Part shown: positions 940-58,429 of the stretch, piece after piece
Layout of the letters: every line of letters starts with the position of its first letter
Numbering within the stretch: position 1 is the stretch's first letter
Assembly: GCF_006345805.1 (NCBI RefSeq)
Contig: NC_043013.1
Coordinates: 18,600,001-18,664,000, forward strand
Direction: 5' to 3'
Source of the DNA: Octopus sinensis
Taxonomy: Eukaryota
Length of the DNA stretch: 64,000 nucleotides
Position numbers and translations under genes: made by a program
Notes under the pieces: model-generated
Told to the model about the DNA's origin: nothing
The model's input: only the letters and a program-made list of their open reading frames with translations
Database searches by the model: none

Positions 940-1530
940 CAATCAGTAGGAGGGATATTAGGGAAATGGGGAGGATGTTGCAAAAAGCTTAGGGACCATA
1001 GCTTTAGGAATGTGGAGACGTGCATTGTCGTGGATCAAAATTGGGCCATCTCTATTCACTTGCCTGGGTTGCTTCTTTTTCAAATTCTCATGCATACAAT
1101 CAAATTCCTGGCAATAGGATTTTGCTGTTACCCTCTTTCCTTGTTGCAAAGATGAATAATGAATAACACCCTTTACAGACCAACATACAATGACCACTAA
1201 CATTTTAGGGGGAAATGGTGGTTTTGGGTAGTGTTTAGGTGATTCTCCTGCATCTAATCACTCCAGCTGTTGTCAAAGAGTATCCATTTCTCATCACATC
1301 GAATGATTCGATGCAAAAATGGTTCTTTTTCCAGTCGAGAAAGTAATAAGGAACACACTTCGAGACGCCAGCATTTTTGAATCTCGCTCACTTGATATGA
1401 AACAAATCTATCCGTTTTCTTGACTTTTCCAATTTTGTTCAGGTGTCGAGAAACAGTTGTGCGCGGTGTTTAGAGTTTTGCTGAAAGTTTTCGGATCGTT
1501 GTTCTCGGATTTTGTTTTACCACAACTGAA
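940..1530 (-). mobile_element. Decayed mariner (DD34D-type) transposase
   Basis: Minus-strand translation gives FLHRIIRCDEKWILFDN and VCWSVKGVIHYSSLQQGKRVTAKSYCQEFDCMHENL...GPILIHDNARLH, hallmark mariner catalytic-domain motifs. Frameshifts and stops are present. Confidence 0.9.
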
Positions 1531-1581
1531 TAACTAATTTTGCATAGTGCGCTTATATACACACACACACACACACACACA

Positions 1582-2610: not shown

Positions 2611-3372
2611 GTACTGTTGTTGCTTTTCAGACGATTGATATATCTTGTACAAAACAGAGCAAATACATTAAAATCCTTGCAATAACAGATGGAAAAGAAA
2701 TGTACTTTAGTAATTGAATCTGTGAAATAAATATATAAATAGTTTGTTAGATCTATACAGAGTAATGATTAAATGAATGCGGTTTATTTATTCTGTGATT
2801 ATCAATGAGTGCTCTTGAACTTTCAATCACCGAGATACCACGTAGTCATGATATCACACTGAACAAATAATGCTGGCTTGAAGAACTGTTCAGAATATCA
2901 ATAAAGAAAAATAGCGAATTTAAAAAATTGATAATGATAAAATGACTAGAAGAAAATTTTAAAAAATAAATTTTTCAAAAAAGAAAATTTTTCAAAAAAA
3001 AAAAAATATATATATATATATATATTGAGTGTTTGCTGAGAATTCTTAAGTGATTTTTAAGCAGTTATTCTTTCTGTTTTTCTTAATTTAATTTTTTTTT
3101 TACCTTTAAATATATTGCTTGTAATATATGATAATGTCTTAGAATAAGAAATGCATTTGATAATTTCATGATTTTTAAAGTTTCACTGATTTCCTCGATT
3201 ATTTATAAATTCTGTTTCATGAAAAACCAGCGGGAAAATTGATGTAGGTTTACAAAGAATTTAATGCAAGCTGGCGACAGCTAATTTCAAGTTTTCCCCA
3301 TTACAACGACACTACGTTCGCTGCTGTTAATGAAAATCTAATGGTAATACACACACACACATTAAGTAACGA

Positions 3373-3458
<86 letters not shown>

Positions 3459-3491
3459 GTGTATATGTTATATATAATATGATATATAATA

Positions 3492-3715
3492 AAGTTTAAC
3501 AATTAAGGATAATCTCTTAATAAGGGATCTTTGTCCCTCTTAGTGTGAGGCATTTATGTGTAATAATGCCCTCTATACAATATAGATATAATTAATTTGT
3601 TCAAAAGAAAAAAATTATTTTCGAATTCTTTTCTTTTATGAGGTTTTCACGCTAACTACCCGATAATTTCTTGTTAAGATCCCTTATTAAGAGATTATCC
3701 TTAATTGTTAAACTT
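3492..3715. repeat. Perfect 40-bp inverted repeat around a 144-bp spacer
   Basis: 3492-3531 AAGTTTAACAATTAAGGATAATCTCTTAATAAGGGATCTT is the exact reverse complement of 3676-3715. Confidence 0.9.
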
Positions 3716-4585: not shown

Positions 4586-4807
4586 GCACCTATGTATATA
4601 TTATAAACGCACACGTATATACGCTTATATTTATATATGCACACGCGCACGCGAACACACACTCACACACAAATGCGCGCGCATATATATTTCGAATTCG
4701 ATGCAGCTCTAATAACAAACGTTATCGGTCACATAGCGTAAACAGTGTTGAACACACGCGCTCGCACACAAGCATATACTCACTCACGCTCTGTCTGTCT
4801 GTCTGTA

Positions 4808-4847
<40 letters not shown>

Positions 4848-4955
4848 ACACACACACACAAACACATGGTAAATGAACATACTTTTTTCCTTAGGGTGCT
4901 AAGTGTCTAAGCAGTGATGAGATGGGCTATGAGAAATGTCCGATCAAAATAAATG

Positions 4956-5080
4956 AACATCTGGACGGGGGATCACTCGGCTCGTCCGTCGATGAAGAGC
5001 GCGGCTATGCGCGTGAACTGATGCGAATTGCAGGACTGAGTGAACATAGACACCTCGAACGCACATTGCGGCCCCGTCCG
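4956..5080 (+). pseudogene. Isolated, 3'-truncated 5.8S rRNA copy
   Basis: GGATCACTCGGCTCGTCCGTCGATGAAGAGCGCGGCTA...GAATTGCAGGAC...TGAACATAGACACCTCGAACGCACATTGCGGCCCCG matches the conserved eukaryotic 5.8S blocks. No 18S or 28S is nearby, and the last ~35 nt of 5.8S are missing. Confidence 0.93.
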
Positions 5081-5147
5081 GTCATTCTAATCGGCGGTGC
5101 ATCAGCATGGCCGCAGCTCTGAGCTGAAACTAGAGAGAGAAAAAAAA
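5081..5147 (+). mobile_element. SINE/LINE-type 3' tail fused to the 5.8S copy
   Basis: GGCGGTGCATCAGCATGGCCGCAG...CTGAAAC matches the SINE tail at about 31857-31900 (GGCGGTGCTCAAGCATGCCCGCAGTCAAATGACTGAAAC). It ends in a GA/A-rich tail. Confidence 0.75.
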
Positions 5148-5185
5148 TGAAGAATAGCAGCTAAATGAAAAGGAAATAAGTACAT

Positions 5186-10237: not shown

Positions 10238-10394
<157 letters not shown>

Positions 10395-15086: not shown

Positions 15087-15141
15087 TAACAGTTACATGT
15101 ATGTGTATAGTATGTTTGCATACATACATACATACACACAC

Positions 15142-15172
<31 letters not shown>

Positions 15173-15227
15173 ATGTGTGAGTGTGTGTGTGTCTGTGTGT
15201 ATATATATATGTATATATACATACTTA

Positions 15228-15452
15228 TTGGCTTAGTGGTTAGGGTGTCAGCACCATGATTGTAAGATTGTGGTTTCGATTCCTGTTCTTGAGCAAAACA
15301 CTTCATTTCACGTTGCTCCAGTCCACTCAGCTGGCAAAAATGAGTAATGCTGCGATGGACTGGCGTCCCATCCAGCTGGGGAACACATACGCCATAGAAA
15401 CTGGGAAACCGGGCCCATGAGCCTGGCTAGGCTTTAAAAAGGGCACATTTAT
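15228..15452 (+). mobile_element. tRNA-head SINE
   Basis: GGCTTAGTGGTTAGGG...GTTTCGATTCC...TTGAGCAAAACACTTCATTTCAC...GCGATGGACTGGCGTCCCATCC; head and core shared with 61594-61745. Confidence 0.75.
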
Positions 15453-19221: not shown

Positions 19222-20047
19222 TGTATGTATGTATGTATGCATGCATGTATGTATGTATGTATGTATGTATGTATGTATGTATGCATGCATGATGCATGTA
19301 TGTAGATATGTATACCGGCTTAACAGCAAATCTACATCTCTCTCTCTCTCTGTCTATCTATTTATTTTTGTCTCCTCATTTTCTATCCTTCTTTTTCTGT
19401 TTATTTTCTCACTCTCTCCCATCTATCTATCAATCTATATAACTTCTACAAGTGTGTATATATATATATATATGTATATGTACACATATACACATACATG
19501 AAGACTACGCATATATATGTATATATATTTATTTATATATGTATATATATATATATATATATTTATATATAATATATATATATATATTATATATATATAT
19601 ATGTATGTAGTATGTATGTATGTATGTATGTATGTGTGTGTATAAAATCATTTCAAGGAACAAACAAAACGAAAGAAGGAAAAAGAAGGAGAAAAAGCGA
19701 ACGAGAGGACGTGCTCGTTGAAAGGAGGGAGTTTTTCACGTTCCGAGCATAGTTCCTCGTTGGAAAGGAGAAAGGGAAAAGTCCAAAGAAGAAGAAGGAA
19801 AATCAACAGGTCACGTGTAGTTATATTTCTGAAGTATATAGCAGCTAACGTTTTCTCAATTACAACATTTAAGTTTGATGCTCTCCAACGCCATTGAGTG
19901 TTCACCAATACATCGAGCTGAAAAAGAAGACAATAAAATCGTCAAATTTAGCCTGTGCACCCTCTGTGTGCGTATATACATACGTATATGTATACATGCA
20001 TACATACATACATACATACATACATACACACATACATACATACATAC

Positions 20048-20095
<48 letters not shown>

Positions 20096-20502
20096 ATATG
20101 TATGTATTTATATATGTATGTGTGTGTGTGTGTAAGTGTGTTTCTGAGAGCATGCGTGTCGTGTGACATACATATATACATGCATACATACATAACTGTA
20201 AGTTCATACATTTTTATATGTGTACTTTGGTATCCCTTATCTTTGACGACAAAGTTCGGTTAATGTTTTCCTTTATGTAAACTTCGTGACCTCTTTGTAC
20301 ACGTGAATCGAAATGAATAACACACTACGGTCTTATCTGTATTGAATCTGTCTTACATAAATTGGAAACGTGTATAATATGTTCACTCTCCATCACCTAC
20401 TAACTACGACTGAAGTGATAAATTTATTACACTAAATGTCATTTGCAAATGACTGAACTGAAAATTTCTATATCTTTAACTGAAACAACCTCTTCCATTA
20501 AT

Positions 20503-25765: not shown

Positions 25766-26189
25766 ACGTATGATGCTTCACAATTTCCCAGATTTATATT
25801 TCATTTTCACTTATACGGTATACGGTATGGAGAGATACCAGCAGTTCGGACACATTTGTATATGTGTAAGTGTGTGTGTGTTTTGTGCGTGTATGTGTGT
25901 ATGTATGTGTGTGTGTGTGTGTGTGTTTCCGGTCTGTGTTCCTTACCCCAGCTTGACAATAGGTGTTGGTGTGTTTAAGTTCTTGTAAATTAGTGGTTCG
26001 GTAAAAGAGTCTGTTAGAATAGAGTACTGGAATCAACTCATTCGACTAAACAGTCTTCGTGGTGAAGCCCCATGGCCTCAGTCTGACTGAAACAACTAAA
26101 AGATAAAAGTTAATATACATGCATACATACACACATACATGCATACATTCATACAAAGACACACACACACATATATTTATATATATGTA

Positions 26190-31262: not shown

Positions 31263-32319
31263 ATATACACATACACACACTCATATATACATGCATATAT
31301 GGGTACAGGACATCACCAACAGTGCAAATAACATGAAATACGTAAACAGACAAGGGAAAAACACGAGTGAACTACGTGAGCAACGAGAAAAAAATGGAAA
31401 ACAGGACGAGCTAACACAGAGAAAGGACCTTTCATCAGTTGTCGGCTGTCTAACTACTCCTCATTTCGAGCATTCAACGACAATATGAGTCTTCAAAGGA
31501 CATTTGCTCCCATAAATTCTAAGATAAAACTTAGGAGTTATGGAGGGTCAAAGCTGGGAACTAAAACAGGAAAGTGGAGATAAACAAGGAAACCGAACGA
31601 AAACAAGCATGGAAAGTCTTTAGATCAGAGCGAGAGGAAATACTAAACGCCGGGAGAAACATTTTTTCAAATGAGAAAAGATAGTATACATATATATATT
31701 TATATTTGTGTGTATGTGTTTGTTCCCCCACTACCACTTGACAACCGATGTTGGTGCGTTTAGGTCCCTGTAACTTAGCGGTTCGGCAAAAGTACAGATA
31801 AAATAAGTACTAGGCTTACAAAGATTAAGCATTGGGGTCAATTTGTTCGATTAAAGGCGGTGCTCAAGCATGCCCGCAGTCAAATGACTGAAACAAATAA
31901 AAGAATATATATATATATGTATGTGTGTATGTGTGTGTCTGTGTATGAGTGTGTCTGTGTATGTGTGTGTGTATGTAAGTATATATATATATATATATAT
32001 ATATATACCATAAATTATGTACTTAGGTACATGCATCACTGTTGTACACAGAAACACGCGAACAGACATGCACTCTCTACACACGGTAATTATCTTTCCA
32101 CGCATATATACATGCTCAAGTGTGTAAACACTCAAGCACATATTTTGCGTTAAATTATAGCCGTAATATCTCAGTTACATATATCACCTTATCGTCGAAG
32201 CGATACACTTTCGTGCCAAGACGGAGACTTTATTTTTAAATCTTCGCCTGCATTTTAGGAGATGACTCAACATTGTGACCAATCGGTGAGTTGTGAGCCT
32301 AATTTCTGTGCCTCTTCAG

Positions 32320-39401: not shown

Positions 39402-40066
39402 GGTATGTGTCAGTGCACAACACTTTCGGCCCTTGAGTCACTCTGTTGCTTCTGTTACATATAATTAAAAATATGAATATACTCATATTTTGAGTTCTAT
39501 TTTTCCTATTTACATCACCATACCTGTATGTACATAAAAACATATTTGTGTGTGCGTGTGCATATATATGTATATAAATATATATGCATAATACATATAT
39601 ACATATTTATATATATATGCATATATATGCATGCATGCATATATATTCATATGTGTGCGTATATATATATGTATATATATATGTGTGTATGTATTTATAT
39701 ATATATAAACATACACACACACGCATATATACACACATACATATATATGCATTTTCCTGCTACAAACATATACGCATAGAAACACACATATAAGTATACA
39801 AACACGCAAATGCATACGCACCGATGCATACATACACACGTATTTATATATACTTCTAATTTCGATTCATCCACTCAGAATATTGATACATACATATTTT
39901 CATTCTTTGATACATTCACACAAGCATATACACATGCTTACACGCATATATGCAAACAAACATTGTTACATATATATATATGTATGTACACACATATTTA
40001 AATACCCATATACATGCATAACATATATAATTACATGAACATAATACGCACTCTCACATAACACAC

Positions 40067-55810: not shown

Positions 55811-56020
55811 ATGAGAACGCTATAGTATTTTCGGGTCACTCTCGGGTCACTAAGCAAATGAAATAAGTATTGGGGTCAACTCGTTCAACTAAATATTTTG
55901 AAGATGGTGCCCCGGTATTTCTACAGTTTGATGACTGAAACAAGCAAAAGAATATATATATATATATATAGGTTTGTTGGTGCAAACAGAAAAAATAGAA
56001 CTCAAAATATGAGTACGTAT

Positions 56021-56973: not shown

Positions 56974-57639
56974 ATTAATGATAGCTGTGATGTGGAGATG
57001 GTGATAGGGAAGATGGGGATGATGACAATGGTTTTGATGGTAATTGTGGCAACGATGTTGATGATGTGAATGATCGTAATGGTAAGGATAGGGAGGATCG
57101 CGGAGTGTTTAAGGGGTTTTATGGTGGTACTGACGGTGACGATGATGATGATGATGATGGTGAGGGCGACGACGACAAAGACGATGATGACAATGATGAT
57201 AATAATAAAGATAACGGTGATGAAGTTGGTTATAGCATTGGTAGTGGTGATAATGATGATGATATTGGAGATGCTGGTCTTAGAAATGATAATTACGATA
57301 ATGATAATAACGATGCTGCTGCTGCTGATGATGATGAAGATGATGATGATGACGATGAGTATGATGATGATGAAGATGATGATGATGATGATGATGATGA
57401 AGAAGAGGAGGAGGAGCGTGATGATGCTTAACGTCATCAACGTCATAATCAACATCAGCAAAACCAGCAAGAAGAATAACCAATAATTGGTGGCACTCTA
57501 TACATGACTATGAGTATGTATGTATGTATGCATGTATGTAAGAATATATGATTGTGTGTCTATGTAAGCATAATACATATGCGGATAGATATGAATGCAT
57601 GCATCCATACTACGCAAACACAAAAGTGTGTATGTTGTG

Positions 57640-57732
<93 letters not shown>

Positions 57733-57745
57733 CAAATATATATAT

Positions 57746-57801
<56 letters not shown>

Positions 57802-58429
57802 TATACACACATACATATATATATACATATATGTGTATGTTATTTATATATGTATATAATATATATATTTATCTATATATAATTCTGTATAATTCTGTTT
57901 CTCTGTGTGTATGAATTAGTAAGTATGTGTAAGTGTGTATGCGTGTATGTGTGTTAACTTGTGTGTGTCTGCGCGGCTTAGGTGCGTACAGGTGTGTATG
58001 TTGAGGTGTTTAATAACGTCATAGGAAACAAGTTGATGAGAGAAATGTTTGGTAGGAAAAGAGGAAGAGGTAGAAGCAAACAGTGGTTAATTGCGGCTGC
58101 TACGTCTATAAGAAGCAGCCATATATCTACTGAGAAAATGTCAGTACACTAATTAAATGAATCAAATGTGTTGAAGAACTTCCTTGAGAACCTTGGCCAT
58201 ACACCTTACACCGCCAACCATAGTCCATTACCTCCCAAACCAAACCGACCGATCGACCGACCGTCCAGCTTGCCAGCCAGCCGAACAGCCGAACGGCAAA
58301 TCAAGCAATGGAACTTCAGCTACTCCACTACATCAACGTCAATCAATCAGCCAAGCAACGGGAAAAGAAAGAAAACACAAGAGCAGGGAGACTAAAACAC
58401 GTTGTTAGATTTGCTAAAAATAGCAATCA

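What the first reader, a model, noticed from the sequence alone, without database searches (positions are those of the whole stretch)
4946..5151. 5.8S rRNA head fused to a SINE 3' tail: chimeric retrocopy or possible 5.8S-derived SINE
Seen: about 125 nt of clear 5.8S rRNA (4956-5080) stop at the start of the GC-rich hairpin. They are joined directly to GGCGGTGC..CAGCATGGCCGCAG..CTGAAAC plus a GA/A-rich tail, the same tail as the SINE end near 31857-31900. AAATGAA flanks both sides (4951-4957 and 5145-5151; 11/12 match if extended). Established: SINE heads are known from tRNA, 7SL and 5S, with rarer snRNA- and 28S-derived cases, and small-RNA/LINE chimeras arise by template switching during reverse transcription. 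5.8S is a Pol I product with no internal promoter. Inference: this is a template-switch chimera made by the partner LINE; if multi-copy with a fixed junction, it would be an unusual SINE class. I do not know of a described 5.8S-headed SINE but cannot verify novelty.
Basis: partly seen in the sequence, partly recalled or inferred. Interest (0 to 1): 0.82.

Follow-up and report, generated by a model that had tools for sequence, protein, structure and literature searches.

The report
5.8S rRNA fused to SINE tail
A reverse-transcribed copy of a cephalopod 5.8S ribosomal RNA, with its GC-rich hairpin cleanly skipped, is fused to the short 3' tail that local SINE/LINE retrotransposons use; most likely a one-off by-product of retrotransposition, it would be a new SINE class only if many copies share the junction, which could not be tested here.

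Summary
Window 4961-5083 is a copy of a cephalopod 5.8S rRNA. It is 97.6% identical (120/123) to a 161-nt 5.8S found unchanged in three independent rDNA units. It carries no ITS1 or ITS2.

The 5.8S does not stop at the GC hairpin. Twenty-four nt of hairpin are deleted exactly between two GGCCCCG direct repeats. The 5.8S then resumes for 7 nt (TCCGGTC) and ends about 10 nt before the mature 3' end.

From 5084 to 5130 a 47-nt retroposon tail follows, then (GA)4A8. The tail shares GGCGGTGC...AGCATGsCCGCAG and CTGAAAC with the SINE copy at 31856-31894 (0 chance matches expected). Its second hairpin differs, keeping pairing through three double changes. The tail therefore comes from a related but different lineage. 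It has no match in the rDNA spacers examined.

A 12/14 flanking repeat fits a target-site duplication only weakly (p about 0.02-0.05).

Best reading: a chimeric retrocopy made by template switching from a tail-bearing RNA to mature 5.8S rRNA. No Pol III boxes and no second copy were found. However, no octopod genome was searchable here, so a multi-copy 5.8S-headed SINE family remains untested (about 25%).

The parts
4947..4960 (+). Candidate left target-site duplication, AAAATAAATGAACA. Its last bases overlap the fuzzy 5' junction: GAACAT at 4955-4960 lines up with the rRNA's GAAACC, with 3 mismatches.
   Evidence: 12/14 match to 5140-5153. Shuffles reach this at 0.022 and genomic control pairs at 0.055. 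An alternative exact 8-mer, TAAATGAA at 4950-4957 and 5163-5170, has p about 0.09.
4961..5076 (+). 5.8S rRNA-derived head, part 1, equal to positions 5-120 of the reference cephalopod 5.8S. It has 3 substitutions (C>G, C>G, C>A) and retains 15 CpGs.
   Evidence: Rfam 5.8S hit. blastn gives 113/116 identity to L011, L012 and L014. Global alignment. CpG observed/expected is 1.32.
5070..5076 (+). Deletion scar: a single GGCCCCG where the rRNA has two copies 24 nt apart. The GC-rich hairpin (reference positions 121-144) is missing.
   Evidence: Alignment to L011 and L012. Two overlapping blastn blocks, 4961-5076 and 5070-5083.
5077..5083 (+). 5.8S rRNA-derived head, part 2: TCCGGTC, equal to reference positions 145-151. 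The last ~10 nt of the mature rRNA (GAGAGGCGGT) are absent.
   Evidence: 14/14 blastn block 5070-5083 against L011 4375-4388.
5084..5130 (+). Retroposon (SINE/LINE-type) 3' tail. It consists of ATTCTAATC, hairpin 1 (GGCGGTGCATCAGCATGGCC, 5093-5112), hairpin 2 (CAGCTCTGAGCTG, 5114-5126) and AAAC.
   Evidence: The motif is shared only with the SINE copy at 31856-31879. CTGAAAC terminus shared with SINE copies A and C and B. Two-hairpin fold at -17.7 kcal/mol. Pair counts. No match to rDNA, ITS2 or 28S.
5131..5147 (+). Simple-sequence 3' end, TAGAGAGAG followed by A8. The A-run may partly belong to the TSD.
   Evidence: Read directly from the sequence.
5140..5153 (+). Candidate right target-site duplication, AAAAAAAATGAAGA.
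31720..31895 (+). Comparator, not part of the element: SINE copy A, whose tail carries the same hairpin-1 motif. Related copies are B at about 25937-26100 and C at about 55860-55955.

Best explanation
This is an RNA-mediated chimeric retrocopy, most likely a single or low-copy, dead-on-arrival insertion.

Proposed sequence of events (inferred):
1. A LINE reverse transcriptase started target-primed reverse transcription on an RNA carrying the family's 3' tail. That RNA was either a LINE 3' end or a SINE of a lineage related to, but distinct from, the SINE copies in this window.
2. It copied about 47 nt of the two-hairpin tail.
3. It then switched template onto a mature 5.8S rRNA about 10 nt from that RNA's 3' end. 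The join may involve TC or GGTC microhomology.
4. It copied the rRNA to, or to within 5 nt of, its 5' end. On the way it jumped across the very stable GC hairpin between two GGCCCCG direct repeats, which removed 24 nt.
5. The cDNA was integrated, probably with a ~14-bp target-site duplication.

Shown directly: the two-part composition, the exact rRNA coordinates, the deletion scar, the absence of rDNA spacers, the tail's fold and the low divergence from functional 5.8S.

Inferred: the template switch, the timing of the hairpin skip (during reverse transcription versus later replication slippage), the identity of the enzyme, and the low copy number.
For: - **Head identity.** The head is 97.6% identical (120/123) to a 5.8S that is 100% identical in three rDNA units with 18S or 28S neighbours (L011, L012, L014).
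- **Cephalopod source.** The head is 94.3% identical to the 5.8S of the named cuttlefish Acanthosepion pharaonis.
- **No spacers.** Upstream and downstream flanks have no similarity to the ITS1 or ITS2 of those units, and the tail has no rDNA match. A genuine dispersed rDNA fragment in the cuttlefish (L015) keeps about 280 nt and 220 nt of GC-rich spacer. The template here was therefore processed rRNA.
- **Junction position.** The join lies at rRNA position 151 of about 161, near the 3' end. This is the geometry expected for a switch from the tail RNA to the acceptor's 3' end.
- **Hairpin loss.** The hairpin is removed precisely between 7-nt direct repeats.
- **Tail.** It matches the SINE tail motif with 0 chance matches expected. 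It folds into the same two hairpins and ends in CTGAAAC plus simple sequence, like SINE copies A to C.
- **TSD.** A 12/14 flanking repeat brackets the whole unit.
- **No promoter signal.** There is no B-box match within 3 mismatches and only one 3-mismatch A-box match. There is no other copy in the window.
- **Precedent.** Template-switch chimeras of small RNAs and 28S rRNA with LINE, Alu or SINE 3' parts are documented (PMC4494074; bioRxiv 10.1101/2025.02.02.635956; PMC2104539).
Against: - The TSD is only marginally significant, and a second candidate pair exists.
- The 5' end has three consecutive mismatches to the rRNA (CAT versus ACC), so the exact 5' boundary is uncertain.
- The partner LINE was not found, so LINE-tail origin rests on similarity to SINE tails only.
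- The tail's hairpin 2 differs from all three SINE copies in the window by compensated changes. That means its donor was an actively maintained lineage I never saw. That lineage could be a 5.8S-headed family itself.
- Low copy number is assumed, not shown, because no octopod genome could be searched.
- Meeting such an element in a single 64-kb window is a priori more likely if many exist.
Confidence: 0.6

Rival explanations
1. It is one copy of a multi-copy, 5.8S-headed SINE-like family. A founding template-switch chimera of hairpin-deleted 5.8S head plus recognised tail became a master copy. The master would be transcribed from flanking promoters or a cryptic one, and the partner LINE amplified it through the tail hairpins.
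For: - The tail is intact through both hairpins and the CTGAAAC terminus.
- Hairpin 2 has three both-sided changes that keep pairing. This points to a separately maintained, functional tail lineage not represented by SINE copies A to C.
- An internally deleted small-RNA head has precedent in real families such as SINEU-3 and monomeric Alu (PMC4494074).
- Promoter-less heads exist in the U1/U2-derived SINEU families and in 28S-derived SINE28 (PMC4494074; PMC10946416).
- Finding the element in one arbitrary 64-kb window favours high copy number.
Against: - Only one copy occurs in 64 kb, while the ordinary SINE type occurs three times.
- There are no Pol III A or B boxes.
- The head is 97.6% identical to functional rRNA with no obvious family-specific drift.
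- No ORF continuing from 5.8S into this tail exists among 1.84 billion representative proteins. No junction match exists in the viral, metagenome or prokaryote-genome collections. Both are weak negatives.
- No such family appears in a 2024 review of rDNA in transposable elements, or in my full-text searches.
Confidence: 0.25
2. Two independent events produced the arrangement. Either a 5.8S fragment and a 5'-truncated SINE/LINE tail landed side by side, or two cDNA fragments were captured together during double-strand-break repair. No template switch was involved.
For: - The TSD is weak.
- The segment between TCCGGTC and GGCGGTGC (ATTCTAATC) aligns to the SINE tails only with gaps.
- 5'-truncated retroposon copies are common.
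Against: - A 3'-truncated, tail-less 5.8S cDNA has no obvious way to integrate on its own with tail-specific LINEs.
- The two parts abut without any intervening target DNA.
- They are in the same orientation, in the order expected from a single cDNA.
- The only flanking repeat brackets the whole unit.
Confidence: 0.09
3. It is a native rDNA fragment (5.8S plus the species' own ITS2), or an assembly artefact that joined rDNA reads to a SINE.
For: - GGCGGT is both the 3' end of the cephalopod 5.8S and the start of the tail motif. This creates a superficial continuity that also let Rfam extend its alignment to 5101.
- Dispersed rDNA fragments do exist in cephalopods (L015, L013).
Against: - The tail has no match to ITS2 or 28S of three rDNA units, but matches the SINE tail.
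- No ITS1 lies upstream.
- The hairpin deletion and three substitutions are not features of rDNA reads.
- The flanks are unique, ordinary AT-rich sequence.
- The species' own ITS2 was not available, so exclusion is not absolute.
Confidence: 0.03

Closest known systems
Template-switch chimeric retrocopies of small nuclear or nucleolar RNAs and rRNAs with LINE or SINE 3' parts. Examples: U6/L1, U3/L1, 5S/L1, U1 or U2 with Alu, 28S/L1 in mammals; MGL-LINE bipartite and tripartite chimeras in Magnaporthe.
   Same: - The 5' part is an abundant non-coding RNA in sense orientation.
- The join lies near that RNA's 3' end, to a 5'-truncated retroposon 3' part.
- There is one simple-sequence tail and one flanking duplication.
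- The element is non-autonomous and usually dead on arrival (PMC4494074 section 19; bioRxiv 10.1101/2025.02.02.635956; PMC2104539).
   Different: - The RNA partner is 5.8S, which none of those catalogues lists. The 2025 L1 survey has no occurrence of '5.8S'.
- The host is a cephalopod.
- The 3' part is a structured, hairpin-bearing tail of the kind SINEs share with tail-specific LINEs, not an L1 poly(A) end.
- A second, intramolecular skip removed the rRNA hairpin.
SINEU families (U1/U2 snRNA-headed SINEs of crocodilians; Kojima 2015, PMC4494074)
   Same: - The head comes from an RNA without a type-2 internal Pol III promoter.
- The proposed origin is a template switch onto the small RNA.
- SINEU-3 has an internally deleted head.
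   Different: SINEU families have 137 to about 7,700 copies with shared junctions, shared deletions and subfamilies. Here only one copy is known. SINEU is mobilised by Tx1 with target specificity. The partner here is unknown.
SINE28 (28S rRNA-derived mammalian SINE; Longo 2015, cited in PMC10946416) and SINE3 / 5S rRNA-headed SINEs
   Same: rRNA-derived sequence sits in a LINE-dependent non-autonomous element.
   Different: 5S heads carry an internal Pol III promoter. SINE28 is a documented multi-copy family. 5.8S is a Pol I product cut out of the 45S precursor. No copy-number evidence exists here.
tRNA-derived octopus SINEs (OK, OR1, OR2; Ohshima and Okada 1994, cited in PMC4758252) and the SINE copies A, B and C in this window
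   Same: They share the hairpin-1 motif, the CAG...CTG hairpin 2, the CTGAAAC terminus and a simple-sequence end.
   Different: - They have a different head. Copies A to C have no 5.8S similarity.
- The inner three pairs of hairpin 2 differ.
- Which named octopus SINE copies A to C belong to was not tested. My recollection that this is the abundant octopus SINE is memory only.

Membership tests
Template-switch chimeric retrocopy (U6/L1-type) | The 5' part is a processed cellular RNA without precursor or spacer sequence. | tested here: met
   The head equals 5.8S positions 5-151. Flanks have no ITS1 or ITS2 similarity. Contrast the spacer-bearing fragment L015.
Template-switch chimeric retrocopy (U6/L1-type) | The 3' part is a 5'-truncated LINE or SINE 3' end in the same orientation, joined at or near the 3' end of the small RNA. 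| tested here: met
   A 47-nt tail shares the motif with SINE copy A. The join is at rRNA position 151 of about 161.
Template-switch chimeric retrocopy (U6/L1-type) | A single target-site duplication flanks the whole chimera. | tested here: inconclusive
   A 12/14 repeat, with p about 0.02 from shuffles and 0.055 from genomic controls. A second 8/8 candidate also exists.
Template-switch chimeric retrocopy (U6/L1-type) | The junction is unique: each chimera is an independent event. | not testable with these tools
   No octopod genome is searchable here. There is one copy in the window.
SINE (LINE-dependent multi-copy family) | Many dispersed copies share the same head-tail junction and diagnostic changes, each with its own TSD. 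| not testable with these tools
   Only one copy in 64 kb. Junction scans of the viral, metagenome and prokaryote collections gave only chance bacterial hits. The protein-level searches found no second junction.
SINE (LINE-dependent multi-copy family) | An internal Pol III promoter (A and B boxes, or 5S-type) lies in the head. | tested here: not met
   No B-box match within 3 mismatches. One 3-mismatch A-box match at 5033. 5.8S is a Pol I product (established knowledge).
SINE (LINE-dependent multi-copy family) | The 3' tail is shared with a partner LINE. | tested here: inconclusive
   The tail is shared with SINE copies in the window. No LINE or reverse-transcriptase ORF occurs in the window, and the partner LINE was not found.
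Functional 5.8S rRNA gene | It lies in an 18S-ITS1-5.8S-ITS2-28S unit with an intact GC hairpin and 3' end. | tested here: not met
   No SSU or LSU hit in the window. The hairpin is deleted and the last ~10 nt are missing.

The most novel reading that the evidence does not exclude
Octopods harbour a previously undescribed SINE class whose head is a hairpin-deleted 5.8S rRNA, a Pol I-derived RNA with no internal promoter. It would be mobilised through its own variant of the two-hairpin tail, and this locus would be one copy. It would show that template switching onto an rRNA can found an amplifying family. It would add a fifth or sixth kind of SINE head to tRNA, 7SL, 5S, U1/U2 and 28S.
Probability: 0.25. 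Interest if true: 0.75.

Novelty: new member of a known kind. Interest (0 to 1): 0.42.

Why it matters
As a single locus it is a clean natural record of two reverse-transcriptase template jumps in one cDNA. One jump is intermolecular, from the tail RNA to 5.8S rRNA. The other is intramolecular, across a GC hairpin between 7-nt repeats.

It occurs in a cephalopod, where retroposon mechanisms are little studied, and with an RNA partner (5.8S) that I could not find reported in chimeric retrocopies or SINEs. Such chimeras are the proposed raw material from which new SINEs arise.

If genome-wide searches show many copies with this junction, it would be a new SINE class with a Pol I-derived head. 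That would raise the question of how such an element is transcribed. If the locus is unique, it is a minor curiosity.

Tried and rejected
1. **Pan-eukaryote consensus comparison.** I first compared the head with the Rfam consensus and with my memory of mollusc 5.8S. That suggested about 15% divergence and 'compensatory' changes in rRNA helices. Real cephalopod 5.8S sequences showed those bases are lineage-typical, and true divergence is 2.4%. I rejected the idea of an old element or structure-constrained head.
2. **ORF as a handle.** I used the spurious 66-aa ORF 4922-5122, which reads through head and tail.
   - The word-indexed search found only an unrelated organism's 5.8S.
   - The exhaustive HMMER search found rDNA read-through ORFs but none continuing into the tail.
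3. **SINE translation as query.** It found no candidates.
4. **Exact look-up of seven window ORFs.** None is in the collection, so the source assembly is not represented there.
5. **Junction pattern scans.**
   - Viral contigs gave 0 matches.
   - Metagenome contigs gave 4 and prokaryote genomes gave 4.
   - All eight are bacterial chance matches with no 5.8S.
   - Tail-only and head-only patterns in viral contigs gave 0.
6. **Full-text search for tail sequence strings.** Only unrelated 10-mer hits came back.
7. **Literature search for a 5.8S-derived SINE, retropseudogene or chimera.** Nothing relevant was found.
8. **Naming the organism.** I could not identify the organisms behind GCA_024449705.1 or ERR13252635. 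The cephalopod assignment rests on the named Acanthosepion pharaonis relative.
9. **tRNA and Pol III box scans.** ARAGORN found no tRNA in the window, so neither the element nor SINE copy A is called as one. In the A/B-box scan the chimera had no B-box match within 3 mismatches and one 3-mismatch A-box match; SINE copy A, run as a control, gave only 2-3-mismatch matches, so the scan is weakly discriminating.
10. **Flank repeat check.** Neither flank belongs to a repeat family in the window.

Full report
**What is at the locus**

Rfam's gathering-threshold scan of the 64-kb window returns one hit, 5.8S rRNA at 4957-5101 on the + strand (86.7 bits, E 4e-20). The window has no 18S or 28S, no tRNA and no credible protein-coding ORF. 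It is microsatellite-rich intergenic DNA.

The 5.8S-like head is unique in the window. The motif GGCGGTGCnnnAGCATGsCCGCAG occurs twice only, at 5093-5116 and inside a SINE copy at 31856-31879. It had 0 matches in 100 dinucleotide-preserving shuffles.

**Getting a proper 5.8S reference**

Comparison with the pan-eukaryote Rfam consensus made the head look about 19% diverged at conserved positions. This was misleading.

I used a spurious 66-aa ORF (4922-5122) that happens to read through head and tail as a handle. An exhaustive HMMER search of 1.84 billion representative proteins found ORFs that read through real rDNA. Three of them led to contigs:
- L011, from NCBI GCA_024449705.1;
- L012, from Logan ERR13252635;
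- L014, from ENA ERZ23499442.

On these contigs a 5.8S (117.4 bits) sits next to 28S, and in L011 and L014 also downstream of 18S. Their spacers differ, but the 161-nt 5.8S is 100% identical in all three.

A sister type of this 5.8S, 94.4% identical, belongs to the named cuttlefish Acanthosepion pharaonis. The reference is therefore cephalopod. The window's head carries the bases that distinguish the reference type from the cuttlefish type, at 97.6% versus 94.3% identity. I could not name the three source organisms. My impression that the window and its SINEs are octopod rests on memory only.

**Corrected anatomy**

| Window coordinates | Content |
|---|---|
| 4961-5076 | rRNA positions 5-120, 113/116 identical |
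| between 5076 and 5077 (scar GGCCCCG at 5070-5076) | rRNA positions 121-144 missing: 24 nt, essentially the whole GC-rich hairpin |
| 5077-5083 (TCCGGTC) | rRNA positions 145-151 |
| not present | last ~10 nt of the mature rRNA (GAGAGGCGGT) |
| 4955-4960 (GAACAT) | lines up with the rRNA's GAAACC with three mismatches, so the 5' boundary is fuzzy within 5 nt |

- The rRNA has two GGCCCCG repeats flanking the missing segment. The element has one.
- The chance that seven specific bases follow the scar is about 6e-5.
- There is no similarity to ITS1 upstream or ITS2 downstream.
- For contrast, a dispersed rDNA fragment in the cuttlefish genome (L015) keeps a few hundred nt of GC-rich spacer on both sides of its 5.8S.

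The template here was therefore processed 5.8S RNA, not rDNA or pre-rRNA. The hairpin is excised and the rRNA resumes.

**The tail**

- 5084-5130 is ATTCTAATC, then GGCGGTGCATCAGCATGGCC, then G, then CAGCTCTGAGCTG (the last four letters of GCAG overlap hairpin 2), then AAAC. It is followed by TAGAGAGAG and A8.
- It has no match in the rDNA units.
- It aligns with the 3' ends of three SINE-like copies in the window: A at 31720-31895, B at about 25937-26100 and C at about 55860-55955. All three end in CTGAAACAAnnAAAAGA plus a microsatellite.
- It folds into two adjacent hairpins, as copy A's tail does.
- Hairpin 2 keeps its outer CAG/CTG in all four sequences. In the chimera the three inner pairs are all different and all still paired: CAGCTC/GAGCTG here against CAGTCA/TGACTG in copy A.
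- Formal pair counting gives 3 pairs changed on both sides and 95.5% of cells paired in that helix. With partners slid by 1-3 columns, 26-44% of cells pair across the whole two-hairpin structure, against 89.8% as drawn.
- With four sequences this is suggestive, not proof. The chance of three inner pairs complementing by accident is roughly 2-5%.

It implies the tail was copied from a related but separate, structurally maintained lineage. That lineage could be the partner LINE, another SINE subfamily or, in the exciting case, a 5.8S-headed family.

**Flanks**

AAAATAAATGAACA (4947-4960) and AAAAAAAATGAAGA (5140-5153) match 12/14. Shuffled flanks reach this in 2.2% of trials, and real genomic pairs at the same spacing in 5.5%. 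An alternative exact 8-mer pair, TAAATGAA at 4950-4957 and 5163-5170, has p about 0.09. A TSD bracketing the whole unit is therefore plausible but not strongly established. The flanks belong to no repeat in the window.

**Mechanism**

The geometry is that of a template-switch chimera. It is a sense-sense fusion. The retroposon part is 5'-truncated. The join sits close to the 3' end of the cellular RNA. The cellular RNA is copied to its 5' end. One simple tail and one candidate TSD complete the pattern.

The hairpin loss between direct repeats reads as a second, intramolecular jump by the same enzyme, although later replication slippage cannot be excluded. Possible microhomology at the join is short: TC, or GGTC against GGGGTC in the SINE tails.

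Such chimeras are documented for the following partners:
- U6, U3, U5, 5S, U1, U2, 7SL, 7SK, Y and tRNA;
- 28S rRNA with L1 or Alu;
- a fungal LINE.

The sources are PMC4494074, bioRxiv 10.1101/2025.02.02.635956 and PMC2104539.

The head's 2.4% divergence, with all 15 CpGs kept, suggests a fairly recent event. This assumes the species' own 5.8S equals the reference.

**SINE or one-off?**

- *Against a family.* There is one copy in 64 kb. No B box matches within 3 mismatches, and there is only a poor A-box match. No protein-level or DNA-pattern trace of a second junction appeared in any collection I could search. Those collections do not contain octopod genomes in searchable form, and the window's own ORFs are absent from them. 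These negatives are therefore weak.
- *For a family.* The tail is complete and lineage-specific. Internally deleted, promoter-less heads occur in genuine families such as SINEU-3 (PMC4494074). Meeting such an element in an arbitrary 64-kb window is more likely if copies are many.
- *My estimates.* About 0.6 for a single or low-copy chimera, about 0.25 for a multi-copy family, and the rest for independent adjacent events or artefact.

**Novelty**

- A 2024 review of rDNA inside transposable elements lists 5S-derived SINEs and the 28S-derived SINE28 among rRNA-derived SINEs, but nothing from 5.8S.
- A 2025 survey of L1 chimeras never mentions 5.8S.
- Full-text searches for 5.8S-derived, 5.8S pseudogene or 5.8S retropseudogene returned nothing relevant.
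- The library lacks most subscription journals and Repbase. 'Not described' is therefore provisional.

As it stands this is a new member (5.8S partner, cephalopod host, structured tail) of a known kind, the template-switch chimeric retrocopy.

**Verdict**

The chimera interpretation is supported. The SINE-class interpretation is open and can be decided by one BLAST against octopod genomes.

Noticed in passing
L015 (Acanthosepion pharaonis GCA_903632075.3, CAHIKZ030002123.1:268407-275057), about 2990-3650; 5S at 1443-1560 (-): A full-length 5.8S (3273-3430, 117 bits) with GC-rich ITS1-like and ITS2-like flanks lies in AT-rich DNA. No 18S or 28S occurs within 3 kb, and a 5S rRNA hit lies 1.7 kb upstream. 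This is a dispersed rDNA fragment that kept its spacers. The annotation calls a 216-aa 'unnamed protein product' across it.
   Followed up: partly
L013 (ENA ERZ21867824 ctg61564l), 10272-10350: A cuttlefish/squid-type 5.8S fragment (about rRNA positions 50-137, 95% identical to the window's head over 63 nt) sits in AT-rich non-rDNA sequence. It has no spacers and no recognisable SINE tail. This is another dispersed 5.8S piece in a cephalopod-like genome.
   Followed up: partly
window 31720-31895, about 25937-26100, about 55860-55955: Three diverged copies of a SINE-like repeat all end in CTGAAACAAnnAAAAGA and run straight into (TA)n or (TG)n microsatellites. Their tails differ in the region before hairpin 1 and in hairpin 2, which suggests several subfamilies. 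ARAGORN does not call a tRNA in any of them.
   Followed up: partly
window, throughout (for example 2412-2530, 15093-15228, 19961-20197, 39540-39752, 57516-57828): More than 300 sub-threshold Rfam 'evalue' hits to mir-297, mir-466, mir-3149 and mir-1277 are all (TG)n, (TA)n or (CA)n microsatellites. They are far below gathering scores and are not miRNA genes.
   Followed up: yes
window 4790-4860: A (TCTG)n, (TC)n, (CA)n compound microsatellite lies about 100 bp upstream of the chimera. It is unrelated to the element but typical of the region.
   Followed up: no
L011 1080-3944: The 18S rRNA hit spans 2,865 nt for an 1,831-nt model. The rDNA that provides the reference 5.8S therefore has very large 18S expansion segments.
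   Followed up: no
window 4922-5122 (+): A 66-aa ATG-to-stop ORF reads through the 5.8S head and into the tail. It is spurious. Equivalent ORFs over real rDNA are present as 'proteins' in public collections, which is what made the reference 5.8S retrievable.
   Followed up: yes
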